Shown here in pieces: positions 10,182 through 52,004 of a stretch of 64,000 nt of DNA; positions within the stretch are counted from its first letter, which is position 1; each line of letters starts with the position of its first letter. The position numbers were made by a program, and so were the translations under genes. Under the pieces are notes generated by a model. It did not search any database, was not told where the DNA came from, and saw nothing but the letters and a program-made list of their open reading frames with translations. The DNA lies in IMG/VR virus record IMGVR_UViG_3300027963_000035, positions 1-64,000 of that record. The stretch is one strand, 5' to 3'.

Positions 10182-10451
10182 ATGAAAAAGTTTAAAGATT
10201 ACATTAAAGATAAAAAAGACCACAATGTTATATTGACCGGATTAAATGTTGACGAAAATTTTTGGAATAATTTTCTTTTGGTTATCAATAATAGTCAAGG
10301 ATTATCTGATCTTTTAGGAGTTTCTAAAAATAAGATTTCAACTTGGAACAAAAAAATAAGAGATGCTTTAAAAGAACATGAAAATAGAGATCAAAAAGTT
10401 TTAAGAAATAAAAAGATCATCAGAACTGGTCTTAAAAATTCTTCCAAATAA
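10182..10451 (+). CDS. Hypothetical protein with a CTS-like N-terminus (MKKFKDYIKD)
   Basis: Internal ATG of track ORF 10131..10451. Confidence 0.6.
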   Translation: MKKFKDYIKDKKDHNVILTGLNVDENFWNNFLLVINNSQGLSDLLGVSKNKISTWNKKIRDALKEHENRDQKVLRNKKIIRTGLKNSSK

Positions 10452-11175
10452 ATTCTTTTTTATTCTTATTTGATATTTTCTTTCTATTCCAATCTTTGTA
10501 TAGCTTTTTATATAATAAACTATCACTACCACTTAGTATTATTTTGCTATTGGACTTCATTAAAACTTTAGATAAGTCTATGTGCTCTTCTTCTGTCATG
10601 TAATCTTTATATGGACACTGTGATTTTCTATTTTTAACATATCTTGGTGGATCACAATACATCAAAACATTCTCGCTATTAAATATTCCAATTATTTCTA
10701 TAGCCGTATTATTAAAAACAAAAACGTCGGATAATTTTAGAGATATCTGATTCAAGTTCTCCACATTAGTGTTCCAGCTTTCAATATTTTCTATTTTTTT
10801 TCTTTTATTTTTTGAATAACAATAGTTTTTGCACAATCCCCCTCTGCTTGTTCTGTATAGGATATACTGATTTATGGCGTAATCTACATTGTTCTTAAAC
10901 TTATTACGTTTTAATTCTTTTTTGAAAGTTTGTTGATTATAGTTGATTTTTTTAAGTTTGCTTATTGCTTTTTTCCCATCATCTCTCATCACTGTTAAGA
11001 AGTTACTTATTCCATTATTTAAATCATTTAATACTGTTATTTCTGAATTTTCTTTTTTGAGAAACACATTGCAGCATCCGCAAAAAGGCTCGCAATAAAT
11101 GAGATCCTTATGGTTTTCTGGCATTTCTTCTAATATTATATCGGAAAGTTTTCTAGATTTCATTTGGCCTTTCAT
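10432..11175 (-). CDS. Dam-family DNA adenine methyltransferase with divergent motifs
   Basis: YCEPFCG (motif I), VLNDLN and MYCDPPRY (motif IV variant). Confidence 0.8.
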   Translation of the reverse strand: MKGQMKSRKLSDIILEEMPENHKDLIYCEPFCGCCNVFLKKENSEITVLNDLNNGISNFLTVMRDDGKKAISKLKKINYNQQTFKKELKRNKFKNNVDYAINQYILYRTSRGGLCKNYCYSKNKRKKIENIESWNTNVENLNQISLKLSDVFVFNNTAIEIIGIFNSENVLMYCDPPRYVKNRKSQCPYKDYMTEEEHIDLSKVLMKSNSKIILSGSDSLLYKKLYKDWNRKKISNKNKKEFIWKNF

Positions 11176-11371
11176 CTTCTTCTATTTTATTTACAAAAGC
11201 ATTACAAGCTGTACAGCTAACATTAAAATGTCCGTAACCCTTAAGTTTTCCAGGCCAATACCAGCCCAACGGATTCTTTTCATGACAATTAACACATAAA
11301 ACACTCATTATCTTTTTTTCTTTTGCCGTGTTTTCGTCTATATAAAAGTAGCAATCTTCTTGAATTTTCAT
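11153..11371 (-). CDS. Small Cys-rich (zinc-ribbon-like) hypothetical protein
   Basis: CVNC...CTAC pairs; start overlaps the dam-like gene. Confidence 0.55.
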   Translation of the reverse strand: MKIQEDCYFYIDENTAKEKKIMSVLCVNCHEKNPLGWYWPGKLKGYGHFNVSCTACNAFVNKIEEDERPNEI

Positions 11372-11458
11372 GAGTTTTTACTTTATTATGTAATAGAGTC
11401 GATTTTTTTCAATTTTTGCTCTTATTTTTTACCGTAAAACCAATAACTATATTACATT

Positions 11459-13969
11459 ATGGCATGGTCAGACTATTTTAAATTGTTTACATTTGGTTTC
11501 CAAAAGGATCCAAGTTCTAAGGTACAAGATACTAAAAATCTTACTGGGGCAGGCATCGCTCAAGCGGATGCCCTGCAGACATTTGCCGGTGATGATGTAG
11601 TTAATAATCCAGGTGGACTGATGGCATATCGTCAAACAAACGATATGATCGATATAACCACCCTAACGAATAGAACTGCTAGATACAAGGAATATGAGAG
11701 GCTTAGAAATCTACCCGAGATAGAAACTGTTGTTACGGTAATATCCGATGAAGCATGTGTTAGCGGAAACACAGAAATAAGCACTCCTTTTGGACTTAAA
11801 AAAATTGAAGACTTGGTAAAAAACAACCCAGATGAAAGATTTCTAGTTTATTGCTACGATGAAATTTCTAAAGATTATACCCTTGGCTGGGCATATAATC
11901 CAAGATTGGTTAAGAAAGAGAAAACAATAACCATAATATTGGATGATGGAAGCAAATTCACAGCTACTAGTGATCACAAAGTTTTAAACCGAAATGGGGA
12001 TTGGGTGGAAACAGGCTCCTTGAAAGAAGGAGACACACTCATGGCATTCTATAGATTGCCTGTAAATAATTATCAAACTAAATTAAATAAAAATCAGTTC
12101 CCCAGAGTATTTACATACAACAAAGGTTGGACTCACGAGAGAATGTTCGTTGATGAATGGCGAACAGGAAAAGTAGAAGAAGAAAATAAAAAGACATCAA
12201 AAATACTTCACATGTTAAGTAAAGGATTGGCTTTAAATAAAACATGTGAGTTAATCGGAATGACAGTTCCGGGTGTAATTGCTAATTTAAAGAGGATTGG
12301 GTTCACTACCACCGAAGTTCATAGATTAAGTAAGAAACAAGACCGCCGCAGAGTTATAGGTGTTTTCAAAAATGAAACAGAAGAAAATGTATATGATATA
12401 AGTGTAGAAAAACATAAGTGCTTTTGCACAGATAGTGTGGTCTTACATAATTGTCAAAAAGACACAGAAGGTAACATATGCAAATTGGAAATATCAAATG
12501 AAGAAGTTAGAAAAGAATTAGAATTCTTATTCTTCCATCGACAGATGTTGAATATAAATAAAAATGGGTGGAGCTGGTTTAAGAATCTTTGTGTGAATGG
12601 AGATCACTTCTTAGAACTGATAATAGATCCAGATAATCCGGAGGACGGATTATATAAAGCCATATCCCTGCCAGCAGAGACTATGTATCGCATAGAAACT
12701 ATCCGGGGTAAATTAATAGAATTCCAACAGAGTAAAGAAGGGCCGGACTATAGTGCTTTGATGAACCCCATACCATTGGGTCAAGATAATTTCGATCTTC
12801 AAAAATCTACTGCCATAAGATTCAACTTAAATCAAATCGTTCATTTCAGAATAGGAGAAGATAGAAAATTATTTTATCCTTATGGAGTGAGTTTGATAGA
12901 ACCAGCCAGAAGCCCTGCTCATCAATTAAGATTGATGGAAGATGCCATGGTCACATATAGATTAGCTAGAGCACCTGAGAGAAGAGTGTTTTATGTAGAT
13001 GTTGGTCAATTACCACCATTTAAAGTTGATAGCTTAATCGATAGAATGAAGGACCAGTTCAGAAAAAGAAAAATAGCCATGGGAAGCGGTTCCAGTGCTA
13101 ATCAAGTAGATGAAAGATGGCAGCCACCTGCAGTAGATGAAGATTATTGGTTGCCATTAAGGCCGGGCAGTAACACCAGAATAGAAACTCTTCCTGGGGC
13201 ACAGAATTTAGGTGAAGTTGATGATGCAATTTATTTTAGAAATAAACTTTTTGTGAGTTTAAATTTTCCAAAAAGTTATTTTAGTGGAGAGGACGTCAAT
13301 GCTACGAGAATGACTTTATCCGCACAGGATGTTAAATTTGCAAGAATGATCGAGAGATTACAATCTTCTTTTGAAGATGGGCTCTACGACATAGCAGATA
13401 GACACCTATATCTTCGTGGATTTCCTCAAGAACTCTATAAAGATCTTAAAATAAAGATGACTCCTCCAAGCGATTGGAGAGAATTAAGTAGAGCTGAAGT
13501 TGTTAATTCTAGATTAAATGTTGCCACACAACTTAAAACAGCAAATTTAATGAGCGATTATGATATTTACACTCAGTGGCTTCAATACAATGATCAAGAA
13601 ACTTCTGAGATGCTTAGTAGATTAAAGATTCAAAAACTAGAAGAATTAAAGATTCAAGTTTTATCTCAAAATCCTCAATTATTGGGGGTGGGCATTCCTC
13701 AAGAAAATAACGGAGATGAAACTGAGTTATCCGCAGTCCCTGGCGGCCCCGCACAAAATTTAGAGGCTCCTTCCGAAGATAGTGGAGAAACTGAAACTGA
13801 AACTCCTCAAGAAGAGCCCGCTCCATCTGAGGAGGAAACCTCAGAGGATAATAATGCCAAACCCCTCCCAGAACCAGATAAGCAGGATGTTGAAAAATAC
13901 GGTCTAGAAATAAAGGATTATGAAACAGAAATGGATAGTGAAAATCCAGACTACTCTATAGACGGTTAA
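11459..13969 (+). CDS. gp20: Portal vertex protein (T4 gp20-like), intein-containing
   Basis: Conserved gp20 motifs LMEDAMVTYRLARAPERRVFYVDVGQLP, EDYWLP, IETLPGAQNLGEVDD and VKFARMIERLQ, with an acidic C-terminal tail. Confidence 0.95.
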   Translation: MAWSDYFKLFTFGFQKDPSSKVQDTKNLTGAGIAQADALQTFAGDDVVNNPGGLMAYRQTNDMIDITTLTNRTARYKEYERLRNLPEIETVVTVISDEACVSGNTEISTPFGLKKIEDLVKNNPDERFLVYCYDEISKDYTLGWAYNPRLVKKEKTITIILDDGSKFTATSDHKVLNRNGDWVETGSLKEGDTLMAFYRLPVNNYQTKLNKNQFPRVFTYNKGWTHERMFVDEWRTGKVEEENKKTSKILHMLSKGLALNKTCELIGMTVPGVIANLKRIGFTTTEVHRLSKKQDRRRVIGVFKNETEENVYDISVEKHKCFCTDSVVLHNCQKDTEGNICKLEISNEEVRKELEFLFFHRQMLNINKNGWSWFKNLCVNGDHFLELIIDPDNPEDGLYKAISLPAETMYRIETIRGKLIEFQQSKEGPDYSALMNPIPLGQDNFDLQKSTAIRFNLNQIVHFRIGEDRKLFYPYGVSLIEPARSPAHQLRLMEDAMVTYRLARAPERRVFYVDVGQLPPFKVDSLIDRMKDQFRKRKIAMGSGSSANQVDERWQPPAVDEDYWLPLRPGSNTRIETLPGAQNLGEVDDAIYFRNKLFVSLNFPKSYFSGEDVNATRMTLSAQDVKFARMIERLQSSFEDGLYDIADRHLYLRGFPQELYKDLKIKMTPPSDWRELSRAEVVNSRLNVATQLKTANLMSDYDIYTQWLQYNDQETSEMLSRLKIQKLEELKIQVLSQNPQLLGVGIPQENNGDETELSAVPGGPAQNLEAPSEDSGETETETPQEEPAPSEEETSEDNNAKPLPEPDKQDVEKYGLEIKDYETEMDSENPDYSIDG
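11756..12451 (+). mobile_element. Intein (232 aa) in the portal protein with a degenerate central endonuclease/HTH remnant
   Basis: N-junction DEA|CVSGNTEI, block B TSDHKVL, block F VYDISVE and C-junction VVLHN|CQKD (Cys +1). Confidence 0.93.
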
Positions 13970-17743: not shown

Positions 17744-18151
17744 CTATTTCTCGCCTTTCCATGAAATTCTTTTACTTGATTTTTTTTTATTTTTATTTTT
17801 ATTACAGGCTGATAAAACAGGTCGGCACGCAGGATATTCTCTTTCTGTTCCTTTGCCTGTTTTTTTTCTTCCACAAGGTACTAATTTTCCTTTTTTACTA
17901 GCCTTACAATCTATCCATCCACCTGTTTTTCTGCTGAACCAACCATGAAGTCCCTGTTCTTTTTCTTTATTGAAAATTGATTCTTCAAGATTTTCATTTT
18001 TTGAGTTGCCCCAATTTTTGGCTCCTTTTTTTCTACACTGGACCAATGCGCCTGACGAATATGCAGATGGAAAAACTGAATATCTACTTTTAACCTTATA
18101 ATAACAAGCGTCTTTTTCTTCGTTTATTAGCCATTCTTTAAAATTTTTCAT
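17744..18151 (-). CDS. Basic Cys-containing protein with a CTS-like N-terminus (MKNFKEWLINE)
   Basis: DACYYKVKSRYSVFPSAYSSGALVQCRKKG-type module, recalled from T4-like cyanophage hypothetical proteins. Confidence 0.65.
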   Translation of the reverse strand: MKNFKEWLINEEKDACYYKVKSRYSVFPSAYSSGALVQCRKKGAKNWGNSKNENLEESIFNKEKEQGLHGWFSRKTGGWIDCKASKKGKLVPCGRKKTGKGTEREYPACRPVLSACNKNKNKKKSSKRISWKGEK

Positions 18152-18212
18152 AGTACTTTATATATTAAAAATTCAAACATAAAAAATAACAAAATTATTA
18201 ATATCTACTTAT

Positions 18213-26933: not shown

Positions 26934-26941
26934 ATCAACGA

Positions 26942-27843: not shown

Positions 27844-27867
27844 GTTTATATTTTACTATTTTAGTTT

Positions 27868-31801: not shown

Positions 31802-31824
31802 GTGGTTAAATAGTATATAAATCT

Positions 31825-35960: not shown

Positions 35961-36069
35961 GATATTTTCCTTTCGTAATCTGATATCATATGTAGTTAGT
36001 GCGTGTAATTTTACCGCTATTTTTCTGGCGTGGGGGGATAAATATATATACTGTTTAATATATAAATAT

Positions 36070-38749: not shown

Positions 38750-40174
38750 TCAGACAATGAAGTTAGCGATGTTAAGTCTGGCATAAAATTTTGCTCCTTC
38801 TCGAAGCAACTTCTTCCCATACCTTGTTAACAGACCCTTACGTGGTGTGAAGGAATCTGGATCAAGGACTACTGGAGTCTGGGTGAGTGGCACGTATGGG
38901 CAGTAGAAGTATCCGCTGTCCATGTAGCTGTCGCCCTTATATCCCATTAGGATTTGACCTGTTGGGAACAGTGGGTCCTTGTAGAGTCTCCAACGATTGT
39001 TCACAGTTCCGACATACTGGATGCCGAGTGAGCTAGTGAAAGTCTCTGAAGGAGCTGGAGCGAAACCGGCTGTGGCTGTTTCGAATACTGAAGCAACTTC
39101 TGGACTTGTTACTAACCAATTGGCACCACCACGTAGTGTCTTACGATGAATTACGTTGCTGACTTCAACAACCTTAACGTATAGACTCTCGTAGCGTTCC
39201 TTGACTGTATCACCGAGGGCGGTGCTATAGTCCCAAGCACTGACGGTACCGGCGTTATTGCGGAGGTCACCTAGAACTTCACGGTCGATTTCTAGATTGA
39301 TTTCCTGAGCAAGAACGGCAGTTAGCTCAGCCTCGGCGTCGAGGTTGTGCTGTGAACGTAGATCTTGCTGAGCCTCATAACTCCAAACTGCCTTCAGTTT
39401 ACGAGTCTTGGCGGCAATCTCTTCGCTCTCGATGGCGAGATTGATCTCGGGCATATCACTGTTGCCTTCCATGTTGTATTCATATGATACAACTACGGTG
39501 TTGGCACTTGGATCATTATTCCAAGTTAGACTAACAGCACCAGTTGTTGGATTAAGTGTACCACTTGTTACCTTGTTACTTGGGCTGCCAACGTCGGTGA
39601 CACTCATTGTGCCGCCAGCTGAAACAACGAAAGTATTGACAACAACTGTACCATCATAAACTGTACCGGTCATTGTGCCAGCGATAACTGGAACGTGCTC
39701 AACAGTGAAAGCAGTGGTTGTGCCACCGGCGTCAGTATGGCTCTCGTTCTGAACGAACTGATGAGAGTAGAAGACGTCGAGATTGGCTGTACCATCGGCT
39801 AACTGCTGTAGTGAGTTAACGTCATCACCTGGGAATCCGCCCTTAGCGGCTCCACGGACAGCACCCTTGTTGCTGCCATATCTAAAACGGAGATAGTAAA
39901 CTAGACCGGTTGGGCCGAGCAATGGCTGGACCGAGACGATCTTGTTTGCAATCAACTGTGGGTAAACTCTGCGAACAAGTGGGATGCTGATTCTTTTGAA
40001 TTGAGCAACGTCACCTGTGTCGGTTGAAACTTCATTGATGAGTCTCTGGTTCTCGAGAAGAACAGCTGTGGTGGATCGGACGTAACGATCTTCGATGCCC
40101 TCCAACAAGCCGGTTTTCTTCCAACGACCTTCTAACTCCTTCGCTTCGTTGAGAAATTTAGCATTTATATTCAT
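38750..40174 (-). CDS. gp23: Major capsid protein (T4 gp23-like)
   Basis: SVQPLLGPTGLVYYLR, AKTRKLKAVWSYEAQQDL, EINLEIDRE and YCPYVPL. Confidence 0.97.
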   Translation of the reverse strand: MNINAKFLNEAKELEGRWKKTGLLEGIEDRYVRSTTAVLLENQRLINEVSTDTGDVAQFKRISIPLVRRVYPQLIANKIVSVQPLLGPTGLVYYLRFRYGSNKGAVRGAAKGGFPGDDVNSLQQLADGTANLDVFYSHQFVQNESHTDAGGTTTAFTVEHVPVIAGTMTGTVYDGTVVVNTFVVSAGGTMSVTDVGSPSNKVTSGTLNPTTGAVSLTWNNDPSANTVVVSYEYNMEGNSDMPEINLAIESEEIAAKTRKLKAVWSYEAQQDLRSQHNLDAEAELTAVLAQEINLEIDREVLGDLRNNAGTVSAWDYSTALGDTVKERYESLYVKVVEVSNVIHRKTLRGGANWLVTSPEVASVFETATAGFAPAPSETFTSSLGIQYVGTVNNRWRLYKDPLFPTGQILMGYKGDSYMDSGYFYCPYVPLTQTPVVLDPDSFTPRKGLLTRYGKKLLREGAKFYARLNIANFIV

Positions 40175-40219: not shown

Positions 40220-41116
40220 TCAGTCTTCTATCTTTTTAATACCAGCTAAAATGTGCAAATCGTTAAAGTCGTGTTGAGTACCATTATTTTCCGCAATAAC
40301 AGCTTCACCAGCGACTACTTGTCCTCTCCCCATTACATTCTTGCTCTTTTCAGCTCTTTCTTTCATTTCATTAACAGTTTTTACCTGTTTTTCATTCTCT
40401 ACAGCCTTGACTTGTTCGGTCACAACTGTTTGTGCGTGGCGAACAGCCTCGGTTAGTTTTGTGTTCTCTGTCGATAGTCTTATGCTTCTGGCCTCTAATA
40501 GCTTGATTTGGCCCTTGAGATCATCAATCTGCTTCTTGGCTTCATCAACCTTAGCAGAACTGACACTTGCATAATCTTCGTCACTTAGATATTCACTTGT
40601 GATATCAACAATCTTGTCGAAAGCACTTCTGTGCTCGACAGTTCTTGGATCAGCAAGGACATCCTTCTTGGCTTGTTCATAGATTTCGGCACCCTTGAAC
40701 TGTAGAAATTGATCTACTTTGTCAACGATGTACTCTTTCATCTCGGCAAGCTTCTTGTCGTATTCTTCATAGAGGGAAACTTCAAGACTACCATTCTTGC
40801 TTCTCTCCTCTTTGAGCATTTCATAAGCTTCTTCGTAGCCCTCTTCGAGAGCTGCTTCATACTCTTCACCTTGAACTTCAAGACGATTTCTGAGTTCAGA
40901 GATGATAGCATAAGCTTCGGTATAACCTTCTTCTGCTGTCTTTTCAGCTGACTTTAGTTCATTGGAAACTTCGGCGTAGGCCTCCTCCAATTTGGAATTA
41001 AATTCAGTCTCTAGTTCTGACTTTGCATCCTTTAACATTTCTTCGACTGCTGAGCTTACCTCTTGAATCTGATCAGCAGGTAAGAGTTTTTCTAGTGCTT
41101 CTTTAATTTTGTTCAT
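40220..41116 (-). CDS. gp22: Prohead core scaffold protein (T4 gp22-like)
   Basis: Acidic coiled coil located between the protease and the capsid gene, with KVDQFL and an ATGA overlap with gp21. Confidence 0.8.
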   Translation of the reverse strand: MNKIKEALEKLLPADQIQEVSSAVEEMLKDAKSELETEFNSKLEEAYAEVSNELKSAEKTAEEGYTEAYAIISELRNRLEVQGEEYEAALEEGYEEAYEMLKEERSKNGSLEVSLYEEYDKKLAEMKEYIVDKVDQFLQFKGAEIYEQAKKDVLADPRTVEHRSAFDKIVDITSEYLSDEDYASVSSAKVDEAKKQIDDLKGQIKLLEARSIRLSTENTKLTEAVRHAQTVVTEQVKAVENEKQVKTVNEMKERAEKSKNVMGRGQVVAGEAVIAENNGTQHDFNDLHILAGIKKIED

Positions 41117-41802
41117 GAGCCTAAACCTCGCTTTAATGAATTGGTTGAATTTTCGATTATTGTTCCTAAACAAGCAATTAACGCTTCTTTATTAACAGTA
41201 TATATGCTGCTGCTTTCATTTTTTGCAGGAATTTCTTCCACCGCAGAAGAAATTTCTACACTTTCTTTCTTATCCTTCTTATCAGTAACCTTCTCTTGAA
41301 AAGCTGCGAAAGTGCTAGGATCAGCTACTGCGTCGAATGTTATAAGTTTATAACTTTCACCGATAACTAATACTCCATTTTCATTTACTTTTCCATTACC
41401 AACGCCTCTGCTGCTAATGCCAACTCTAACACCGTCGTTCAAAAGACTTCTCAGTATTTTTCCGTGAGGTGTGTTGAGTATTTCGCCTTCGCCCATGAGG
41501 ACATTGCCGTCCCACCAAAGCTTGGTGATGACATGGCTAGCCTTTTCAAAATGTATAATGCTGTCGGTTGGGTGATCTAACTCACCAATTAAACCTCTGT
41601 GCTTTACACATTCGTTAAGTTTTTTGACGTTCTCACTGAGAACTTCAAAAGGATATATTCTTTTGTTTTTATTAATAGCTTCAGCTTCTTGGAACTTGCC
41701 ACGGAATCTGGTTAAGCCTTTGTCCGTGACACTTTCATTTAGGTCCATGTTGAACCCACCACCGCTGCAGCTATCTACGAATAGCATTTGATCTTTTGAC
41801 AT
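41113..41802 (-). CDS. gp21: Prohead maturation protease (T4 gp21-like)
   Basis: NKNKRIYP, GELDHP, VGISSRGVG and FDAVADPS. Confidence 0.95.
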   Translation of the reverse strand: MSKDQMLFVDSCSGGGFNMDLNESVTDKGLTRFRGKFQEAEAINKNKRIYPFEVLSENVKKLNECVKHRGLIGELDHPTDSIIHFEKASHVITKLWWDGNVLMGEGEILNTPHGKILRSLLNDGVRVGISSRGVGNGKVNENGVLVIGESYKLITFDAVADPSTFAAFQEKVTDKKDKKESVEISSAVEEIPAKNESSSIYTVNKEALIACLGTIIENSTNSLKRGLGS

Positions 41803-41820: not shown

Positions 41821-43608
41821 TTATTTGGCAAAAGGATTCTGAAGACCTGGCCAAGTATCTTTACCTTGGTTTGTTCCGAGATCTTCACCATCCTTATCAA
41901 CTCCTTTTTCGCCCTTCATCGTGAATTCCATTGCATTTGGAATATAAGGATTAGTTAATGATGGATAGACGTGGTCACCGCCAACGTTGCCCCAACCATT
42001 ATCTTTCATCTCATCATCTAAATCGTTTACAATAGTCTTGCCATCGCTAACTGGAGCTGGGCTATCGACTACACTCTTGTCCTCAAGATCAGCAGCTGGG
42101 CTGTAACTTTTTCTTGCCTTTTCACTAAGCGATGGGTGATCCCCATTAACACTCATTGTTGGCATACTGTCAGCCCAATCTTCGCATCCGAGATTACTCT
42201 CATAGATATCCTTGAGGTAGTTGGCAACAAACTCAGCAAGTTGAACATCTGGTTCTTCTTCTTGGTTGACAACTAGGATGCACTCATCGAGTAGTTCCGA
42301 AGCTTCAGCAACAACTTCTTTGTCGCCAAGTTTTTCGGCTAATACTTTGAGGTTCTCTAGAGCCTCAACTAGATCTTCGAAAACCTTGAGATCAGCACTG
42401 GCTGATTCATCAAGATACTTGTAGAACTTGTCAGCAACTTCTTTGAATCCTGGATACTTGTCTTCGCACTCTTCACAAACTGTGGCACCAGCTAAATTTG
42501 TGATTTTGTTAACACGATCTGAATAAGCATTGTGAGCGGTTCTTAGTAGACCCTCAGCAATGAAATTGCAGGTATTATCATCAAAATTTCTGGCTCCAAC
42601 TGTCTCAAGGGCTTCTTTAACCATTGAAGATAGTTCTTCTTGAGTGACATAAACTAGTTCTGGAAAATTCTTAACAGCATTCTCTAAACTTGTCTCAAGC
42701 ATGTTGTTATCAGAAATATTGTTGTACTTCTTGATTTGAGCAACACTCTTGACGAAGTTTTCATTCTTTACAAGGCATTTGCCTTTGCTTCTGAGAACCT
42801 TGACTTCGGTGTCGAGAGTCTTCCAATCGAAACTTAATACTTTGCCTTCATTTACTTTGCTTACTGTTGGAACTTTGATTCCAACGATATCACCTTTATC
42901 GTTTTGTTCAACGATGCATTCTTTGTAAACATGGCCCATTTCTTTGTGATTTACATAACCAAGAACGTTCTCTGTTAGGCTGGTCCATTCCTTCATAGTC
43001 TTAACAACATAAATTCTGGCTCTTGGATTGCTGATGTTCTTAAGACGACGCTTGGCACTGGCTGTCTTCATCTTGAGGTAGTTCTTGAGGCTAGCACGCT
43101 TTCTCTTTGTTTTCATCATTGAGCGAATACGTTTGGCAACAAGGCTTCTTGGCTGCTTCTTGTGGAACAATTTGCTCCTCTTGCCAGTTGGCTTGCTTAA
43201 CTTAACTTTGAAACCTTCTGAAATTAGGTTTCTTCTTACTGATGGCATATTGAGATACTCGCTAAGAACTTCTGAAGCGACTTCTTCTTTATTCTCAAGA
43301 AGATTATCAATCATGTCAGAGATGAGTTTCTTTGACTCATTCTTTTCTGTCTCTTCATCGATTACTAGTTCTTCGATGTTTTCTAGAGCAAGATTATCGT
43401 TGGTTAGTTTGTAGTTGGCACGAACGATATCTTCGTTTACTGTCTTGTAAACAACTTCTGACTCATTAAAGAACATGAGTTCAAGTTTTTCTGTTTCAAG
43501 AATTGTTGCAAGAAGCTCCTCAGCTTCGATTAGCTCCTTCTCAACTCTGGATACTGACTCATTCTCCATTTTCTTGAATTCATCATAATTGATTAATTTA
43601 CGCTTCAT
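41821..43608 (-). CDS. Large acidic head-associated/prohead core protein (putative)
   Basis: Directly upstream of gp21. Glu-rich with many L/I-x-E sites and a basic insert; AGGGAG Shine-Dalgarno before ATG 43608. Confidence 0.6.
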   Translation of the reverse strand: MKRKLINYDEFKKMENESVSRVEKELIEAEELLATILETEKLELMFFNESEVVYKTVNEDIVRANYKLTNDNLALENIEELVIDEETEKNESKKLISDMIDNLLENKEEVASEVLSEYLNMPSVRRNLISEGFKVKLSKPTGKRSKLFHKKQPRSLVAKRIRSMMKTKRKRASLKNYLKMKTASAKRRLKNISNPRARIYVVKTMKEWTSLTENVLGYVNHKEMGHVYKECIVEQNDKGDIVGIKVPTVSKVNEGKVLSFDWKTLDTEVKVLRSKGKCLVKNENFVKSVAQIKKYNNISDNNMLETSLENAVKNFPELVYVTQEELSSMVKEALETVGARNFDDNTCNFIAEGLLRTAHNAYSDRVNKITNLAGATVCEECEDKYPGFKEVADKFYKYLDESASADLKVFEDLVEALENLKVLAEKLGDKEVVAEASELLDECILVVNQEEEPDVQLAEFVANYLKDIYESNLGCEDWADSMPTMSVNGDHPSLSEKARKSYSPAADLEDKSVVDSPAPVSDGKTIVNDLDDEMKDNGWGNVGGDHVYPSLTNPYIPNAMEFTMKGEKGVDKDGEDLGTNQGKDTWPGLQNPFAK

Positions 43609-43775: not shown

Positions 43776-44126
43776 ATGAAAAGTTTTCAAGAATATTTAA
43801 AAGATAATAATAGTGTTTCTGAAGTCACAGGTATGAATGTTGGAAAAACAGCCTATGGCACCGCTAGTTTCAGCAACAGCGAAGCAGAGCAGCTCACTCA
43901 CATGATGAAGGTTGTTGATATGGCAATCGCTGAGAACCCACAGAGATTTATGAATGCTCTAAGAGGCATTGCTTCAAACAACCCAGAAATGGAACTATTG
44001 ATCTCAAATATTAATCTTCCAAAACTCAAGATGGCTGCTAAGAAACATGTTGAAGAGAATGAGGCTGCTGAAGATCATGATTCAATGGGTGGAGATGAGT
44101 CAAAATATCTACCAAAAGGCATGTAA
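43776..44126 (+). CDS. CTS-like protein (MKSFQEYLKD)
   Basis: 116 aa ORF with an AAGGA Shine-Dalgarno. Confidence 0.7.
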   Translation: MKSFQEYLKDNNSVSEVTGMNVGKTAYGTASFSNSEAEQLTHMMKVVDMAIAENPQRFMNALRGIASNNPEMELLISNINLPKLKMAAKKHVEENEAAEDHDSMGGDESKYLPKGM

Positions 44127-44408
44127 TTGAAAAGTTATAAGGAATACCTCCTGGCAGAAGGTGCTAAAAAAGATTCTGACAAGAGGTCTAAAGATAAAGA
44201 TGATACGAGTCAAAACTCTGCCATAATGGAGTTGGCAGAGAAGCTTCAGAGTGTTTTTAAGAAATATAGCTTGATAACTAGACGAGCTGCTTGGAATAAA
44301 CTTAACACAAAAAAGGGGGATGAGGCAATTGATGACCTCATCAAGAACCCCGCAAGATCCTTAAATGCTTTTAAAAAGCTATCTAATCAAGGAAATCAAG
44401 GAAAATAA
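44127..44408 (+). CDS. CTS-like protein (MKSYKEYLLAE)
   Basis: TTG start abutting the upstream stop. Confidence 0.65.
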   Translation: MKSYKEYLLAEGAKKDSDKRSKDKDDTSQNSAIMELAEKLQSVFKKYSLITRRAAWNKLNTKKGDEAIDDLIKNPARSLNAFKKLSNQGNQGK

Positions 44409-45149: not shown

Positions 45150-45185
45150 AGCCGATCAATTATTTTTTAGTTGATCGGCTTTTTT
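45150..45185 (+). terminator. Intrinsic terminator
   Basis: agccgatcaa / ttgatcggct stem followed by TTTTT. Confidence 0.8.
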
Positions 45186-45716
45186 CTTCATTTTAGTCTT
45201 GTATTTTAGATTTTCCTGACGTCGGGAAAATGGTGTGGGTGGTAGGTCATTTATGCTCATGTGAGGATCGGCAGAATACTCGCTTGCTTTTGGACTGCGC
45301 TCATTTTCTGGATCTGGCATACTCTGATTTACGAATCCTTCTTTTTTATTATAGTCGAGGTGATGAAACACATCATCCATATACTCGCCTGCTAAATTTA
45401 GTTTTGATTTAATCCAGTCTTTTAGTTCTTTTTCTTTATCAAGTATCTTTTCTATTTCTTTTGCTTTTTCATGGATGCTTCTCAAATCTCCCATTGCCAT
45501 TTTGTTATTGTCTTCGTTCTGTTGTTTATAGTATTTTAAATAATCAAGAACGGTATTAAGATAATCCTCGGTGTGAGTTAGTTTTGCTTTAACCCAATCT
45601 TCGAGTTCTACATTTGGCTTGACTATACCTAATAATTTTTCACTGTATTGAACTATCTTGTGAACATCATTTTTTGAATGTTCGAGATTTTCTAAGAATG
45701 TTTTGAAGTTAAGCAT
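45156..45716 (-). CDS. CTS-like protein with a duplicated helical module
   Basis: LEDWVKAKLTHTEDYLNTVLDYL and LKDWIKSKLNLAGEYMDDVFHHL. Confidence 0.7.
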   Translation of the reverse strand: MLNFKTFLENLEHSKNDVHKIVQYSEKLLGIVKPNVELEDWVKAKLTHTEDYLNTVLDYLKYYKQQNEDNNKMAMGDLRSIHEKAKEIEKILDKEKELKDWIKSKLNLAGEYMDDVFHHLDYNKKEGFVNQSMPDPENERSPKASEYSADPHMSINDLPPTPFSRRQENLKYKTKMKKKADQLKNN

Positions 45717-46365
45717 ATTTTATCTATTGTTTTCTCTCTATTATTTTATGCAGAAAAAAGAACTATTATTGGTGATTACACACTATAGAGAAAATAATGT
45801 TTTAGTTGATACATTGAATACTAATAAGAGAATACAAAAAATAGACCTACAGTTATACAAAGATATAAATAATCTTTTTTCTCTAGGATCTATTAGAAGC
45901 GGATATAGAAAAAATCCCCATATTTATATGGATCCTCTTTACTATAATCATCAATTCTGTTTTGCTCCTTTATTAAATTTTTGTAAATTTATTTATCTTG
46001 TAAATAAGCCAAGATTAGTGATGCCAAATCTAATCGGGAACAAAACGTACAGCTCAGAGTCGTGTTTAAACTATTATTGTTTTAGGCTTCGCAAGATCTA
46101 TGAAATGATAAGAAAAACTCCCAAGCAAAACTTTAAAGTCTATTTTGACGAGGAGTTTACCCTACCTGAAACTTACAAAAAAATTCAAGAGTTCTTAGAT
46201 TTAAAAGAAGAATTTAATATCAGAAAAGAAAATAGTGTTGCTGACTTTAATATCAGCAACACTATTCTTGAAAAAGCAAATGAGTGTTATGAAAAATATA
46301 GGTTTAAAATCAAGGGGCTACAGGGGCAGGAGCAGGAGCACCGCCTCTTGGAGCCATTGGCATAG
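45703..46365 (-). CDS. Hypothetical protein, possibly a degenerate sulfotransferase fold
   Basis: C-terminal FDEEFTLPETYKKIQEFLDL resembles sulfotransferase C-termini; no PSB loop seen; start uncertain. Confidence 0.45.
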
Positions 46366-46825
46366 AAACTTGGGCATCCTGCATTTTTGGAATGTTCTCT
46401 TTCTCCTTCATTAGTCCCTTTAGAATTCCGCCAAGATAAGAAGCAACTGTTTGTCTTGGATTGGTCGAAGATGGCATACTTGCAGTTTGTGGATTTTTTT
46501 GAAGTTGATTCACAAGATCGTTTAAAACTCTTGCCGCAGAATCAAACTTCGAAGCAGGGCCGGCTAATGTATCGGCGGCTTGAGCAGCACCACCTTTGAT
46601 ACCGCCACCGTCCCAAACATTTTTTCCAAATTGCTTGGCAGCACTCCAGGCATTTTTGCCAAATGCCTTTAGGCTATCCATGAAACCTTCGTCAAGTTCC
46701 ATCTCGGGAGCGTTTTCTAAAATATATTCGGCGGGATTGATGTCCATCTCAACCATAAGTCCTGCAATGCTCTCAACTAGTGTGTCGATATTTTTTTGTT
46801 CAATAAACTCATTAAATGTTTTCAT
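46310..46825 (-). CDS. CTS-like protein (MKTFNEFIEQ)
   Basis: 171 aa ORF with a GAGGA Shine-Dalgarno. Confidence 0.7.
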   Translation of the reverse strand: MKTFNEFIEQKNIDTLVESIAGLMVEMDINPAEYILENAPEMELDEGFMDSLKAFGKNAWSAAKQFGKNVWDGGGIKGGAAQAADTLAGPASKFDSAARVLNDLVNQLQKNPQTASMPSSTNPRQTVASYLGGILKGLMKEKENIPKMQDAQVSMPMAPRGGAPAPAPVAP

Positions 46826-49349: not shown

Positions 49350-49825
49350 AAATGCCAAAAAAGATTTGTGATAAATGCAAAAAAGAAAATGGTGTAAGAG
49401 CCAGAAGATGTAAATTTTGTGATGCCGGCTTTGCATTTAAAATAAAAAAAGATAAGCCCAAGGCAACTAGAATAGACTGGAAGGAGCTCCAAAGCGGAGA
49501 CATTATAAAAGTTTTGGGTGGTGGTCCAATATGGAAAACATCCGACAGCCCTTCTTCTAAAACAGAGGTGGAGGAATATGATGATGAAGACGATGATGAC
49601 AACGAAGATGAAGATGGTTCTTCGAACTTAAAAAATAAAACACGTGACAAAATTTTAATGGGTTATCGTGGAAAGTTCAAAGTTTTTAGATTAGATCAAA
49701 ACGGAATAGTCGCCTATGGAATAGAAAAGAATTCTGGCTATTGTCATATTTGGATGGCTGAAGAAAAATTAATTGATGGTAAATTATTAAAGAGGCCTCA
49801 CAGGATAACCAAAGTTGCATGGTAA
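49346..49825 (+). CDS. Zinc-ribbon hypothetical protein with an acidic insert
   Basis: CDKC...CKFC; EEYDDEDDDDNEDED. Confidence 0.6.
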   Translation: MKMPKKICDKCKKENGVRARRCKFCDAGFAFKIKKDKPKATRIDWKELQSGDIIKVLGGGPIWKTSDSPSSKTEVEEYDDEDDDDNEDEDGSSNLKNKTRDKILMGYRGKFKVFRLDQNGIVAYGIEKNSGYCHIWMAEEKLIDGKLLKRPHRITKVAW

Positions 49826-50571
49826 ATCATGCTTATATTAAGGGGTTTAGCACTTTACCTGATTTAAAGAAGATAAACCCAGAACAGGTCTTTGAAAAAG
49901 ACAGAAAAGATTCTGAATTTATACAAAAAGAAAAAAGAATTGCTCTATCTCAGCAAGAATTCTTTTTTGAAAACCACATATCTGAAGATATATATGAGTC
50001 CTGCGAAAGGTTCATACTGGATAATTACCCCATAAGTCTACAGAGTGGAAAATATATCGATATAGCCAGAGAAATAGATGAAGATCTAATAATTCATAGG
50101 ATAAAAAATAATAAAGATTGGATGGCTAGTGGACATGTCTGCTTCCCCAGTAGTTGGAATCCGGCTGAAAAAATAGGCATGTCTTTTGATGAGTTGCATT
50201 CTCCAGTTCCAATGAGTTTAAAAAATAGCACTAAAATAGTTAATGCAATAATAAACTCTGGGATATTTGAAAGATATCTTTGGAGTGTGGTTCATGAGAG
50301 GAAATATAACTATCATCCAAGGTTTCCATTCATAAATTTTGACAAGAATGACCCTAAGGTTTTTATAAAAATAGAAAGACAAGTCACCGTAGGATTCCCA
50401 GATAAGGGTTTTTGTCTTTTTATTTTAAGACAGTACCTGATTGATGAAGAGGATATAGACAAAGAAAGCTTGATTAAAACAATAAATAATATGACAGAAG
50501 AGCAAAAAAAATATAAAGGTCTGTCAGATTCTAAAGATTTAATTGACTATCTTGGGCAAAATATTTCTTAA
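49819..50571 (+). CDS. DUF3445 / haem-dependent oxidative N-demethylase alpha-subunit-like protein
   Basis: EDLII...GHVCFPSSWNPAEKIGMSFDELHSPVP, ERYLWS and IERQ. Confidence 0.75.
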   Translation: MVNHAYIKGFSTLPDLKKINPEQVFEKDRKDSEFIQKEKRIALSQQEFFFENHISEDIYESCERFILDNYPISLQSGKYIDIAREIDEDLIIHRIKNNKDWMASGHVCFPSSWNPAEKIGMSFDELHSPVPMSLKNSTKIVNAIINSGIFERYLWSVVHERKYNYHPRFPFINFDKNDPKVFIKIERQVTVGFPDKGFCLFILRQYLIDEEDIDKESLIKTINNMTEEQKKYKGLSDSKDLIDYLGQNIS

Positions 50572-51351
50572 AGATTTTTTGTCATGTATCGTGTATTCTT
50601 TTCTTCCATACTGTACACCATTTTTGCACTGATTAAAATATACTGAATCAAAGAATAGTTTATCTGGTTCTACTAAATAAATTTCTATATCATTATTATT
50701 TAAATGTTGATTTATATCTCTTATCATTATCTCATACAAACTAATATCGAGTGCTCTAAAGGCCATTTCTAATGGCTTTAAAATTCCCTTTGCGCCTTCC
50801 CAATAAGAAAGAGTTAAAGGTCTACCCATTATCACATATATTTCGTTATATCCTAAATCTATGCATTGTTTTAATGGCGCTAATTGGCGACTGCCGGCAT
50901 CAACCCAGCCGTTTCTATCTTCTACTAGTCCTGTAATTGCAACGCTTGAAAGCACATTTTCCTTAAACTCATCTGCTGTTATTCCTTTATTGGAAACATA
51001 CATCATCTCTCCAGAATGAATATTTAACTTAGAAACTATACTTTCACATACTGGGGTGTTCTTTAATGCGTTGGAAACTATTTTTTCCATTGGTTTTTGA
51101 TTTAACATCCCTGTTTTTCTCCAGGGAAAGTAATTAATCCCAAAAACATCAAATATGTTTTTTATATTAGACCACATATCTGCAACACCTTGTGGCCCCA
51201 AATAAGCATAACTAGCTGCGCATATACTCCCAGAACTGATCCCTATTGTTAATTCTGGTTTTATATTACTCTCATATAGAGATAAAGCTATTCCCGCTTG
51301 TATACTTCCTCTAGCTCCTTCTCCCGTAAAACAAAAAGCAGTTCTTTTCAA
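50539..51351 (-). CDS. Patatin-like phospholipase
   Basis: GEGARG (oxyanion), GISSG (GxSxG) and VDAG (catalytic Asp). Confidence 0.88.
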   Translation of the reverse strand: MKRTAFCFTGEGARGSIQAGIALSLYESNIKPELTIGISSGSICAASYAYLGPQGVADMWSNIKNIFDVFGINYFPWRKTGMLNQKPMEKIVSNALKNTPVCESIVSKLNIHSGEMMYVSNKGITADEFKENVLSSVAITGLVEDRNGWVDAGSRQLAPLKQCIDLGYNEIYVIMGRPLTLSYWEGAKGILKPLEMAFRALDISLYEIMIRDINQHLNNNDIEIYLVEPDKLFFDSVYFNQCKNGVQYGRKEYTIHDKKSLRNILPKIVN

Positions 51352-52004
51352 GGTAGTTCTTTCTTTTTAACATATCTCGATAATGGTGCCGGACTTGAAC
51401 TTGGTTGTTCTGATTTAAATATATCTTTTAATCTACTATCTTCTTCTTCTGCCCGAGTATCTAATTTTTCTTTACTTGCGGCAGCAAACCAAGATCTTAA
51501 TTTATCTATTTGTTTTTGATCTATCTCTTTTTGTTTTGAAATCACATCCTCTATCTCTTTTTCTTTATATTGACTTGCAAATTTTTTATATTGTCTTTCA
51601 GATAATTTAATCCAAAGGTTTTTGGCGCCCATTGCATCCAGTTGCTGTTGATCTCTTGGTATTAGCTCCCTGCCCATTAGATCTTTTTTTAGGTATAGTT
51701 CATCTATGGATATAATTGTTAATCTTTGATTATATAGATTTAGAACCTTAACAGTAGAATTTCTTACTTCTACTATTTTTGCGATTTGATTCTTCGATAC
51801 TTCCGGACCTAAATCTACTATATCACCTATTGAGATGGCCATTCTTTTTGCATCTTCGTCTGATATATCCGTTCTTTGATATGCTGACGATCTCCTCGAC
51901 AGACTAGTTTTTTCCCTGGATAAACCACTATCCAGGGGCATGAACTCAAAGTTTTCATAAAACTCTGGGTGGTTATCTACTATCCACTCTGAGAAAAGTT
52001 TCAT
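51348..52004 (-). CDS. CTS-like protein (MKLFSEWIVD)
   Basis: 218 aa ORF. Confidence 0.65.
   Translation of the reverse strand: MKLFSEWIVDNHPEFYENFEFMPLDSGLSREKTSLSRRSSAYQRTDISDEDAKRMAISIGDIVDLGPEVSKNQIAKIVEVRNSTVKVLNLYNQRLTIISIDELYLKKDLMGRELIPRDQQQLDAMGAKNLWIKLSERQYKKFASQYKEKEIEDVISKQKEIDQKQIDKLRSWFAAASKEKLDTRAEEEDSRLKDIFKSEQPSSSPAPLSRYVKKKELP

What the first reader, a model, noticed from the sequence alone, without database searches (positions are those of the whole stretch)
10182..52004. Fourteen unrelated ORFs share a T4-type capsid-targeting leader
Seen in sequence: the N-termini MKKFKDYIKD (10182), MKNFKEWLINE (18151-), MRKKFLEWLEE (31050), MNFKEYIQIRE (31349), MKTFIEWLELNE (31825), MKTFYEWLNE (34959-), MKSFNEWLKE (35404-), MKSFQEWRAG (35960-), MKNYQEAIVD (36070), MKSFQEYLKD (43776), MKSYKEYLLAE (44127), MLNFKTFLENLE (45716-), MKTFNEFIEQ (46825-) and MKLFSEWIVD (52004-). 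The bodies are otherwise unrelated, and most cluster around the head genes. Established: T4 internal proteins use a ~10-aa CTS (IPIII MKTYQEFIAE) that gp21 removes at L/I-x-E sites, and such proteins are injected with the DNA (IPI* blocks a restriction enzyme). Inference: a large, modular cargo of packaged and injected effectors, which are candidate novel anti-defence or host-takeover proteins.
Basis: partly seen in the sequence, partly recalled or inferred. Interest (0 to 1): 0.78.

Follow-up and report, generated by a model that had tools for sequence, protein, structure and literature searches.

The report
T4-style capsid address tag, expanded
A freshwater giant phage distantly related to T4 puts nearly the same 8-10-residue N-terminal tag that T4 uses to load proteins into its capsid onto at least 28 unrelated proteins, which gives a sequence-only list of proteins it probably packages and injects.

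Summary
All 14 N-termini are at the stated places; two use GTG or TTG starts and two (36070, 45716) match weakly. The motif M-K-x-[FY]-x-E-[WYF]-[LI] starts 13 of 332 called ORFs, against 0.14 in shuffled N-termini and 1 of 1143 internal Met. Fourteen more carriers lie outside the window on the same 251-kb contig, which is about half a genome. The bodies share no BLASTP similarity, and four Pfam domains begin only after the tag.

The phage has a T4-type portal, a gp21-type protease, a scaffold and a gp23-type capsid protein that matches T4 gp23 only remotely. T4 ipII and ipIII (MKTYQEFIAE) score 11 bits on the model built from this phage. The positions conserved here (4, 7, 8) are those that matter for targeting and processing in T4. 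The tag is kept across relatives from 391 IMG/VR contigs, on at least 62 cargo clusters, and in orthologues with only 31-45% identity.

My best reading is a T4-type capsid-targeting leader with a much larger cargo set. Packaging, cleavage and injection are inferred, not shown. Only about half the carriers have [LIV]-x-E just after the tag. The anti-defence role is speculative. One cargo is an HD hydrolase closest to cyclic-dinucleotide phosphodiesterases.

The parts
10182..10451 (+). Leader ORF, 89 aa, MKKFKDYIKD; basic body
   Evidence: LOO 17.8 bits; ATATATA motif 12 nt upstream; I-K-D at 8-10
17744..18151 (-). Leader ORF, 135 aa, MKNFKEWLINEE; below-threshold DUF5872 match from residue 19
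   Evidence: LOO 24.3 bits; orthologue in L070 keeps the leader
31050..31349 (+). Leader ORF, 99 aa, GTG start, MRKKFLEWLEE; hydrophobic Gly-rich segment after the leader
   Evidence: the L019 orthologue begins MKKFSEWLED with ATG
31349..31801 (+). Leader ORF, 150 aa, MNFKEYIQIRE (tag one residue shorter)
31825..32541 (+). Leader ORF, 238 aa, MKTFIEWLELNE
   Evidence: no Pfam, PHROG or Atlas lead
34486..34959 (-). Leader ORF, 157 aa, MKTFYEWLNE
34994..35404 (-). Leader ORF, 136 aa, MKSFNEWLKE
   Evidence: orthologues at 44% identity keep MKKFNEWLKE
35454..35960 (-). Leader ORF, 168 aa, MKSFQEWRAG; no L/I at 8 and no cleavage-type site; Gly-rich hydrophobic segment
36070..37629 (+). Weak leader ORF, 519 aa, MKNYQEAIVD; C-terminal ERI1/RNase_T-type 3'-5' exonuclease domain (345-506)
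   Evidence: LOO only 7.6 bits; no orthologue in the loci held
43776..44126 (+). Leader ORF, 116 aa, MKSFQEYLKD; conserved across the clade upstream of the 606-aa acidic protein gene
   Evidence: orthologues at 31-34% identity keep MKSFQQYIE
44127..44408 (+). Leader ORF, 93 aa, TTG start, (M)KSYKEYLLAE; conserved across the clade
   Evidence: ATG-started orthologues MKSFNEWVLTEE and MKSFDEFLTEA
45156..45716 (-). Weak leader ORF, 186 aa, MLNFKTFLENLE
   Evidence: LOO 8.4 bits; only near-identical orthologues held
46310..46825 (-). Leader ORF, 171 aa, MKTFNEFIEQ; acidic body
51348..52004 (-). Leader ORF, 218 aa, MKLFSEWIVD
   Evidence: no Atlas lead
41113..41802 (-). gp21-type prohead protease (Peptidase_S77), the presumed leader-processing enzyme
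   Evidence: Pfam 2e-27; T4 gp21 structure 5jbl 1.7e-17; ELDHP, GISSRG and FDAV align with the corresponding T4 gp21 segments
40220..41116 (-). Scaffold-like coiled-coil protein (start taken at MNKIKEALEKLL), the presumed docking core
   Evidence: position between protease and capsid genes; 12 [LI]xE sites against 6.7 expected; no family hit
38750..40174 (-). gp23-type major capsid protein. Its N-terminal 48 residues hold 4 of its 5 [LI]xE sites, and it begins MNINAKFLNE, in register with leader positions 7-10.
   Evidence: Pfam Gp23 1e-89; T4 gp23 structures 1e-33
41821..43608 (-). Acidic protein (595 aa from MKRKLINYDEF; 606 aa from the upstream TTG) of unknown family, not the portal; [LI]xE-rich, possibly a degradable core protein
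   Evidence: no Pfam, PHROG or PDB match; 17 sites against 9.1 expected
11459..13969 (+). T4-type portal protein (836 aa, with an N-terminal extension of about 345 aa)
   Evidence: Portal_T4 1.1e-73

Best explanation
The first 8-12 residues, consensus M-K-[TSN]-F-x-E-[WYF]-[LI]-x-x, are a T4-type capsid (prohead-core) targeting sequence.

Proposed mechanism:
1. The tag forms a short amphipathic helix with F4, W7 and L8 on one face. A flexible linker joins it to an otherwise unrelated body.
2. While the prohead is built on the portal, the tag docks its carrier onto the scaffolding core. The core is the coiled-coil scaffold protein, perhaps together with the acidic 606-aa protein, so the carrier ends up inside the gp23-type shell.
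3. The gp21-type serine protease then degrades the core and the capsid-protein propeptide at [LI]-x-E sites. It trims the tag from the roughly half of carriers that have such a site at residues 9-13. The others would stay unprocessed or be cut elsewhere.
4. The mature proteins are mostly small and basic. They would stay with the packaged DNA and enter the host with it.

Shown: the motif, its enrichment, peptide-level constraint, modularity, conservation across the clade, the presence of the T4-type head genes, and [LI]xE enrichment in the core proteins.

Inferred: docking, encapsidation, cleavage, ejection, and any anti-defence role.
For: - Enrichment: 13 N-termini observed against 0.14 expected (strict motif), 30 against 1.9 (loose motif), and 1 of 1143 internal Met.
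- Peptide-level selection, not DNA-level: F, E, L, N and Y codons in the tag follow genome-wide usage.
- Residue conservation: positions 4, 7 and 8 are hydrophobic in 96-100% of 28 own and 63 related tags, and their neighbours are not. In T4 IPIII, residues 4 and 7 carry targeting and 8 and 10 carry processing (PMC9026906).
- Similarity to T4: ipII/ipIII MKTYQEFIAE score 11.0 bits on this phage's PWM, the top 0.016% of internal 11-mers.
- Machinery present: Peptidase_S77 with homology to 5jbl, Gp23 and Portal_T4.
- [LI]xE is enriched in the capsid propeptide (4 against 1.5), the scaffold (12 against 6.7) and the 606-aa protein (17 against 9.1).
- [LIV]xE ends at residues 9-13 in 13 of 28 own and 36 of 63 related tags, against 7.7% by chance.
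- Modularity: no similarity among the bodies. AAA_33, DUF5662, RNase_T and a weak DUF5872 match all begin after the tag. The AlphaFold model of the DUF5662 cargo shows a helix at 4-10, a loose linker, and a domain from residue 19.
- Homologues of that cargo in other lineages carry other N-terminal tags.
- Conservation: 70 tagged ORFs lie around the capsid gene in 80 related loci. 98 tagged proteins fall into 62 clusters. Orthologues averaging 38% identity keep the residue class at positions 4, 6, 7 and 8 in 90% of cases.
- Clustering near the head genes, p = 2.6e-6.
- A late-promoter-like ATATATA/TATATAA motif precedes 13 of 30 carrier starts against 32 of 302 others, and also precedes the scaffold gene.
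- The bodies are basic: median pI 9.1 against 6.5 for the proteome, like the basic CTS-bearing internal proteins of T-even phages (PMC9026906).
Against: - There are no virion, processing or expression data. Metatranscriptome contigs cover only bits of the capsid and scaffold genes.
- E at position 10 occurs in only 5 of 28 carriers, and 12 of 28 have D or no site at residues 9-13.
- The cargo bodies are not depleted in [LI]xE (46 against 48.8 expected), so no signature of exposure to the protease is visible.
- 16 of 28 carriers lie far from the head genes. Some are ordinary-looking enzymes (kinase, exonuclease, HD hydrolase).
- The same cargo families carry a different tag (MNWYKKAQ) in four near-complete or complete 296-548-kb genomes with no detectable Gp23 or Peptidase_S77. 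N-terminal tagging of these cargos is therefore not tied to T4-type heads.
- The docking partner is unknown, to my knowledge even in T4.
Confidence: 0.65

Rival explanations
1. The tag is a lineage-specific address or recognition label for some process other than encapsidation. Examples would be recognition by a phage or host chaperone or an AAA+ protease (timed degradation), or recruitment to a replication or membrane assembly.
For: The HD-hydrolase and AAA_33-kinase cargo families carry another tag (MNWYKKAQ or MKIYKIAE) in other phage lineages. Four near-complete or complete genomes among these show no Gp23 or S77 match. Many carriers are enzymes and lie far from the head genes. About half lack a cleavage-type site.
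Against: The tag is nearly identical in architecture to the experimentally defined T4 CTS, including the functionally mapped positions 4, 7 and 8. The carriers cluster around the head genes. The tag shares a register with the capsid protein's own N-terminal F-L-N-E. [LIV]xE is enriched right after the tag. Other giant phages without a recognisable gp21 may still use propeptide targeting (PMC5694885).
Confidence: 0.2
2. The shared N-terminus is a nucleotide-level translation-start element, such as an A-rich downstream box or a requirement of leaderless mRNAs, and not a protein signal.
For: Codon 2 is AAA in 36 of 40 Lys codons within residues 2-10 of the tags (most of them codon 2), and codon 3 is ACA in 9 of 9 Thr, both above genome-wide usage. 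A promoter-like motif often sits only 10-13 nt before the ATG, which suggests very short 5' leaders.
Against: Codons 4-8 vary synonymously at the genome-wide rate, while the amino-acid class is 96-100% conserved, including Trp and Phe. Diverged orthologues change codons but keep the residues. Carriers with ordinary Shine-Dalgarno sites have the same tag.
Confidence: 0.05
3. The carriers are fast-diverging paralogues of one ancestral small protein, and only the N-terminus is still recognisable.
For: Many are small orphans in tandem arrays (31-36 kb, 43.7-46.8 kb, 141.6-143.2 kb).
Against: Four carry distinct Pfam matches (a below-threshold DUF5872 match, RNase_T, AAA_33, DUF5662) that start after the tag. 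DUF5662 and AAA_33 homologues elsewhere lack this tag. Lengths range from 71 to 624 aa.
Confidence: 0.07
4. The motif is a chance consequence of AT-rich gene starts (MK..., Lys/Asn/Phe-rich).
For: The genome is 30-39% GC over most of the window, and MK starts are common.
Against: Shuffling residues 2-14 within each N-terminus gives 0.14 matches against 13 observed, and never more than 3 in 2000 trials. Internal Met gives 1 of 1143.
Confidence: 0.01

Closest known systems
T4 and T-even internal proteins (IPI, IPII, IPIII and the 10 or more Ip variants) with the capsid targeting sequence (Mullaney & Black 1996; reviews PMC9026906 and PMC3012670; PMC12373910)
   Same: - An N-terminal tag of about 10 residues with the same pattern: M-K-T-aromatic-x-E-aromatic-[IL].
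- Bodies that are otherwise unrelated and hypervariable, and mostly small and basic.
- A gp21-family protease, a scaffold and a gp23 shell encoded in the same genome.
- An [LI]-x-E site after the tag in many carriers.
   Different: - At least 28 carriers in half a genome (about 9% of ORFs), against 3 in T4 and about 10 families across the T-evens.
- The carriers are dispersed over the genome as well as clustered.
- Trp is preferred at position 7 and Phe at position 4.
- E10 is present in a minority only.
- The cargos include recognisable enzymes.
- The capsid protein matches T4 gp23 only remotely (phmmer E about 1e-33 over most of its length), and the phage is an uncultured freshwater giant phage.
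- No experimental evidence exists.
T4 Alt, gp67 and gp68 (prohead core proteins processed by gp21)
   Same: Proteins incorporated through the core and trimmed at [LI]-x-E. The conserved pair 43776/44127 sits beside the head module, much as genes 67 and 68 sit between genes 20 and 21 in T4 (the T4 gene order is from my own knowledge).
   Different: No sequence similarity was detected. Their role as core components here is a guess.
Ejection or inner-body proteins of phiKZ, 201phi2-1 and SPN3US (PMC5694885, PMC7411985)
   Same: Giant phages that load many proteins into the head and process them after Glu with a diverged gp21-like protease.
   Different: Those propeptides are mostly 80-130 residues long and are not a shared short tag. 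The head module here is clearly T4-like.
Phage P1 Dar antirestriction proteins (PMC9024508, PMC12810830)
   Same: Capsid-loaded anti-defence cargo that depends on targeting during head assembly.
   Different: An unrelated head system with hierarchical protein-protein loading, not a common short leader.

Membership tests
T4-type CTS-bearing internal (packaged) proteins | A short tag at the extreme N-terminus resembling MKTYQEFIAE | tested here: met
   28 ORFs carry it. The T4 ipII/ipIII tag scores 11.0 bits on the PWM built from this phage alone. A DNA pattern written for the tag finds both T4 ipII/ipIII and these ORFs.
T4-type CTS-bearing internal (packaged) proteins | Aromatic or hydrophobic residues at positions 4 and 7, the targeting determinants in IPIII | tested here: met
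   F/Y at position 4 in 28 of 28 and W/Y/F at position 7 in 27 of 28 own tags; 63 of 63 and 63 of 63 in relatives. The determinants are as summarised in PMC9026906.
T4-type CTS-bearing internal (packaged) proteins | A gp21 processing site: L/I at position 8 and Glu at position 10 ([LI]-x-E) | tested here: inconclusive
   L/I at position 8 in 25 of 28, but E10 in only 5 of 28. [LIV]xE ends at residues 9-13 in 13 of 28, [LIV]xD only in 6, later sites in 3, and no site in 6.
T4-type CTS-bearing internal (packaged) proteins | The same genome encodes a gp21-family prohead protease, a scaffolding core and a gp23 shell | tested here: met
   Peptidase_S77 2e-27 and 5jbl 1.7e-17; Gp23 1e-89; Portal_T4 1e-73. 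The scaffold is assigned by position and composition only.
T4-type CTS-bearing internal (packaged) proteins | Bodies unrelated to each other, with the tag as the only shared element | tested here: met
   No BLASTP hit among the bodies. 98 tagged proteins fall into 62 clusters. Distinct Pfam domains start after the tag.
T4-type CTS-bearing internal (packaged) proteins | Made when heads assemble (late transcription) | tested here: inconclusive
   A late-promoter-like ATATATA/TATATAA motif lies upstream of 13 of 30 carrier starts against 32 of 302 others, and upstream of the scaffold gene. RNA runs gave no coverage of the carriers.
T4-type CTS-bearing internal (packaged) proteins | Physically present in virions, N-terminally trimmed, and ejected with the DNA | not testable with these tools
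   No cultured relative: the best phage-database match is an uncultured 595-kb genome. The complex prediction of protease with tag gave no answer.
HD-superfamily phosphohydrolase (cargo at G000:222935-223534, DUF5662) | The H...HD...H...D metal-binding pattern and the HD fold | tested here: met
   Invariant H32, H61-D62, H107, H113-H114 and D155, with H106 nearly invariant, in 63 sequences. The model has pLDDT 91.8. 18 of the 19 best VIA-align matches are HD-type or HD-related domains, led by HD-GYP (Z 8.8) and PgpH (Z 8.0). Foldseek alone was weak. Substrate is unknown.

The most novel reading that the evidence does not exclude
Giant phages may use short, lineage-specific N-terminal 'address labels' to load dozens of exchangeable proteins into the capsid for co-injection. 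The label is MKxFxEWL in this T4-like freshwater clade and MNWYKKAQ or MKIYKIAE in other, non-T4-like huge phages. The loaded proteins would include enzymes such as an HD phosphodiesterase close to cyclic-dinucleotide hydrolases, a P-loop kinase and an ERI1-like exonuclease. If so, the injected effector repertoire of uncultured phages could be read straight from sequence, and cargo families would move between lineages by swapping labels.
Probability: 0.3. Interest if true: 0.8.

Novelty: new variant of a known kind. Interest (0 to 1): 0.62.

Why it matters
Injected internal proteins are among the first phage products to meet host defences. In T4 all three of them are specific inhibitors of type IV restriction enzymes (PMC12373910).

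If the tag means here what it means in T4, three things follow. First, the CTS has been conserved, or re-invented, across phages whose capsid proteins are now only remotely similar. Second, a widespread freshwater clade of giant phages loads roughly ten times more kinds of protein than T4. The clade comprises 391 IMG/VR contigs, some over 500 kb. Third, at least 62 orphan protein families become a defined candidate list for early-acting effectors that can be tested directly.

The tag would also offer a portable packaging label for protein delivery outside the T-even phages.

Tried and rejected
- Complex prediction of the protease with residues 1-40 of the 34994-35404 carrier gave 'no answer' (score 0.00, folded without alignments). 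It is not evidence either way.
- Protein Atlas searches for two orphan cargos gave only sub-threshold hits.
- PHROGs and Pfam gave nothing for most cargos.
- PDB sequence searches gave nothing for the 272-aa ORF with an HD-like HHAEGDVFKHT motif, nor for the AAA_33 kinase.
- Foldseek against the PDB was weak for the DUF5662 model (E>1). Only the exhaustive aligner gave a consistent HD signal.
- I tested whether cargo bodies are depleted in [LI]xE, as expected for residents of a protease-filled prohead. There is no depletion against their own composition (46 against 48.8). The deficit against the proteome-wide excess is modest and non-significant.
- Laying four lake metatranscriptomes on 38.7-44.5 kb gave only short capsid and scaffold pieces and nothing on the carrier genes 43776 and 44127.
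- I first took the 606-aa ORF upstream of the protease for the portal. It is not; the portal is at 11459-13969.
- The 41-kb head region of the 595-kb relative LR756511 holds no canonical carrier, but the whole record has 12 pattern matches against 2 for the control.
- The narrow pattern shows no comparable expansion in XacN1, cyanophage P-RSM6, LR756508 or RM378. Each has 0-1 hits at annotated starts.
- A literature search for the second tag found nothing.

Full report
**What the window is**

The window is the first 64 kb of a single 251,265-bp virus contig. It is an IMG/VR record that CheckV rates at about 50% complete. Several independent freshwater metagenomes hold it.

It encodes a T4-type head module:
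- A gp23-family major capsid protein at 38750-40174(-): Pfam Gp23 1e-89 and T4 gp23 structures at 1e-33.
- A gp21-family prohead protease at 41113-41802(-): Peptidase_S77 2e-27 and T4 gp21 structure 5jbl at 1.7e-17. The ELDHP, GISSRG and FDAV stretches align with the corresponding T4 segments.
- A coiled-coil scaffold-like protein between these two genes.
- A Portal_T4 protein at 11459-13969(+).

The capsid protein is 75% identical to that of one uncultured 595-kb phage (LR756511). It is about 29-36% identical to its next-best matches in the phage collection, which are cyanophages, XacN1 and RM378. It matches T4 gp23 only remotely. This is a far-flung, uncultured member of the T4 superfamily. 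IMG/VR holds 391 contigs with close capsid relatives; the 80 retrieved are 80-97% identical, and some of those contigs are 320-530 kb long.

**Check of the observation**

31050 uses GTG, overlapping the upstream stop codon. 44127 uses TTG immediately after the upstream stop. Diverged orthologues of 44127, and the one orthologue of 31050 that I hold, begin with ATG and the same tag.

I called 332 ORFs on the whole contig with a codon-usage model. Results:
- The strict motif ^M.{1,3}[FY].E[WYF][IL] starts 13 ORFs. Shuffling residues 2-14 within each N-terminus gives 0.14 on average and never more than 3 in 2000 trials. Only 1 of 1143 internal Met is followed by the motif.
- The loose motif starts 30 ORFs, against 1.9 in shuffles.
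- In a leave-one-out PWM, twelve of the fourteen score 11-25 bits. 36070 (7.6 bits) and 45716 (8.4 bits) are at a level where about 0.6 chance matches are expected.
- The same scan adds fourteen carriers outside the window, at 93400, 100064, 111265, 111654, 120138, 133030, 142009, 142359, 142656, 167040, 170800, 182863, 223534 and 230177. That makes about 28 carriers, or about 9% of ORFs, in half a genome.

**Peptide signal or DNA signal**

Codons for F, E, L, N and Y inside the tag follow genome-wide usage. Only Lys-2 (AAA in 36 of 40 Lys codons at residues 2-10) and Thr-3 (ACA, 9 of 9) are biased. These are the same ATG AAA ACA that T4 ipII and ipIII use.

Positions 4, 7 and 8 are hydrophobic in 96-100% of 28 own and 63 related tags, while their neighbours are not. 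This i, i+3, i+4 spacing puts the three residues on one helical face. The constraint therefore acts on the peptide, with a possible initiation-context preference at codons 2-3.

**Modularity**

With residues 1-14 removed, 22 carriers give no BLASTP hit to each other at E<=0.01.

Where a family is recognisable, it starts after the tag:
- AAA_33 kinase from residue 16.
- DUF5662 from residue 22.
- A below-threshold DUF5872 match from residue 19.
- RNase_T/ERI1-like exonuclease at residues 345-506.

An AlphaFold model of the DUF5662 cargo (pLDDT 91.8) shows a helix at residues 4-10, a loose linker, and a compact domain from residue 19.

Among 120 homologues of that cargo, the 15 that carry MKxFxEW include the closest ones. 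The others carry M(x)WYK.A (37), MKIYK.A (37) or other N-termini ahead of the same domain. The cargo itself has the invariant H/HD/H/HH/D pattern of HD phosphohydrolases. Eighteen of its nineteen best exhaustive structural matches are HD-type or HD-related domains, led by HD-GYP and PgpH cyclic-dinucleotide phosphodiesterases at Z 8.8 and 8.0. That is moderate evidence for the fold and only a lead for the substrate.

**Conservation**

- The 80 related loci (966 kb around the capsid gene) hold 70 strict, ATG-started tagged ORFs.
- Own plus related tagged proteins (98) fall into 62 BLAST clusters.
- Ten diverged orthologue pairs average 38% overall identity. They keep the residue class at positions 4, 6, 7 and 8 in 90% of cases.
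- The whole LR756511 record has 12 matches to a back-translated tag pattern, against 2 for the reversed control.
- With the same pattern, this contig has 11 matches against 0. T4 has 5 against 2, including ipII, ipIII and gene 61.1. XacN1, P-RSM6, LR756508 and RM378 have 0-1 matches at annotated starts.

The expansion is therefore specific to this clade.

**Comparison with T4**

T4 ipII and ipIII begin MKTYQEFIAE. This scores 11.0 bits on the PWM built only from this phage, which puts it in the top 0.016% of internal 11-mers.

The review PMC9026906 summarises Mullaney & Black 1996:
- The first ten residues of IPIII suffice for encapsidation.
- Residues 4 and 7 carry targeting.
- Residues 8 and 10 carry processing.
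- Asp at position 10 blocks processing but not targeting.

Here, positions 4 and 7 are the invariant ones and position 8 is L/I in 25 of 28. Position 10 is Glu in only 5 and Asp in 6. [LIV]-x-E ends at residues 9-13 in 13 of 28 own and 36 of 63 related tags, against 7.7% expected by chance. So the targeting half of the T4 signal is fully present. The processing half is present in about half of the carriers.

T4-style processing of the head core is plausible here. [LI]xE is enriched in the first 48 residues of the capsid protein (4 sites against 1.5 expected, with only 1 in the remaining 426 residues). It is also enriched in the scaffold (12 against 6.7) and in the neighbouring acidic 606-aa protein (17 against 9.1). 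The capsid protein itself begins MNINAKFLNE, in register with tag positions 7-10.

**Context**

- Twelve of the 28 carriers lie at 30-53 kb around the protease-scaffold-capsid genes (p = 2.6e-6), and two flank the portal.
- A late-promoter-like ATATATA/TATATAA motif precedes 13 of 30 carrier starts against 32 of 302 others (p = 2e-5). It also precedes the scaffold gene.
- The bodies are basic: median pI 9.1 against 6.5 for the proteome, p = 5e-4.
- Several have a Gly-rich hydrophobic stretch just after the tag.

**Weaknesses**

- Nothing shows that these proteins are in virions, trimmed or injected.
- The complex prediction gave no answer.
- RNA contigs do not cover the carriers.
- The cargo bodies are not depleted in [LI]xE.
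- Sixteen carriers are far from the head genes, and some look like ordinary enzymes.
- The alternative tag MNWYKKAQ marks 33 ORFs in 26 clusters in other IMG/VR contigs, partly in tandem arrays. It is carried by the same AAA_33 and DUF5662 cargo families. Four of the five genomes tested that carry it (296-548 kb, 98-100% complete) have no detectable Gp23 or Peptidase_S77.

That last point supports exchangeable address labels. It also shows that such labels are not tied to T4-type heads, which keeps a non-capsid function open.

**Verdict**

The best explanation, at about 0.65, is a T4-type capsid-targeting leader attached to a much enlarged and partly enzymatic cargo set. The principle is known for T-even phages, where Ip genes have been found by their leader (PMC12373910). 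Its near-identical form in a distant giant-phage clade, its scale, and the label-swapping of cargo families appear not to have been described in the literature I could search. The anti-defence role is a reasonable conjecture, not a finding.

Noticed in passing
L109:147-2837, L119:3864-7194, L110, L116, L120 (IMG/VR contigs); P0013-P0120: A second, different N-terminal tag, M(N/S)WYKKAQ (variant MKIYK(I/L)AE), heads 33 ORFs in 26 BLAST clusters in other uncultured phages. Some are in tandem arrays, for example six in a row in L109. It sits on the same AAA_33 kinase and DUF5662 HD-hydrolase families that carry MKxFxEWL here. It is absent from this contig and from 80 capsid relatives. Four near-complete or complete 296-548-kb genomes that carry it show no Gp23 or Peptidase_S77 match. 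No paper in the library contains WYKKA.
   Followed up: partly
window 10160-10181, 18152-18175, 31805-31824, 36045-36069, 52005-52025 and others: The promoter-like motif (A)TATATAA(A) often begins only 10-13 nt before the ATG. If it works like the T4 late -10 element (TATAAATA; that consensus is from my own knowledge), these mRNAs would be leaderless or nearly so. Other carriers have ordinary AGGA-type ribosome sites instead.
   Followed up: partly
G000:146357-247452, minus strand (outside the window): About 55 copies of GTTTCCYTCYGGTACGGT lie on one strand, upstream of minus-strand genes. This is probably a second (early or middle?) promoter class. There are none in the window, and none within 150 nt upstream of any tagged gene.
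   Followed up: partly
window 41821-43608 (-): An acidic protein (606 aa from the TTG start) lies directly upstream of the protease and has no Pfam, PHROG or PDB match. It is conserved in LR756511. It has 17 [LI]xE sites against 9.1 expected and may be a degradable prohead core protein.
   Followed up: partly
window 11459-13969 (+): The portal protein is 836 aa. The Portal_T4 domain starts only at about residue 345, so there is a long N-terminal extension, reminiscent of the large portal propeptides of phiKZ-like giant phages.
   Followed up: no
window 8942-10165 (+): An ORF with PHROG matches to a glucosyltransferase (1.8e-34) and to a DNA methyltransferase family (8.7e-22) lies just upstream of the tagged ORF at 10182. 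This hints at DNA hypermodification, the setting in which the T4 internal proteins act.
   Followed up: no
window 37854-38642 (-): An HNH-endonuclease-like, Cys-rich ORF lies immediately downstream of the capsid gene. It is a possible homing endonuclease.
   Followed up: no
window 26700-28100: A stretch of about 1.4 kb with no convincing ORF, no tRNA and no Rfam family.
   Followed up: partly
T4 NC_000866 18966-19130 (-): T4 gene 61.1 (54 aa, hypothetical) begins MKTFKEFI, a CTS-like N-terminus outside the known ip loci.
   Followed up: no
G000:111654-112472 (+) and 182372-182863 (-): Two tagged ORFs look like an HD-type phosphoesterase (motif HHAEGDVFKHT, no Pfam hit) and a PNK-like P-loop kinase (AAA_33). 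This pairing recalls RNA-end repair enzymes.
   Followed up: no
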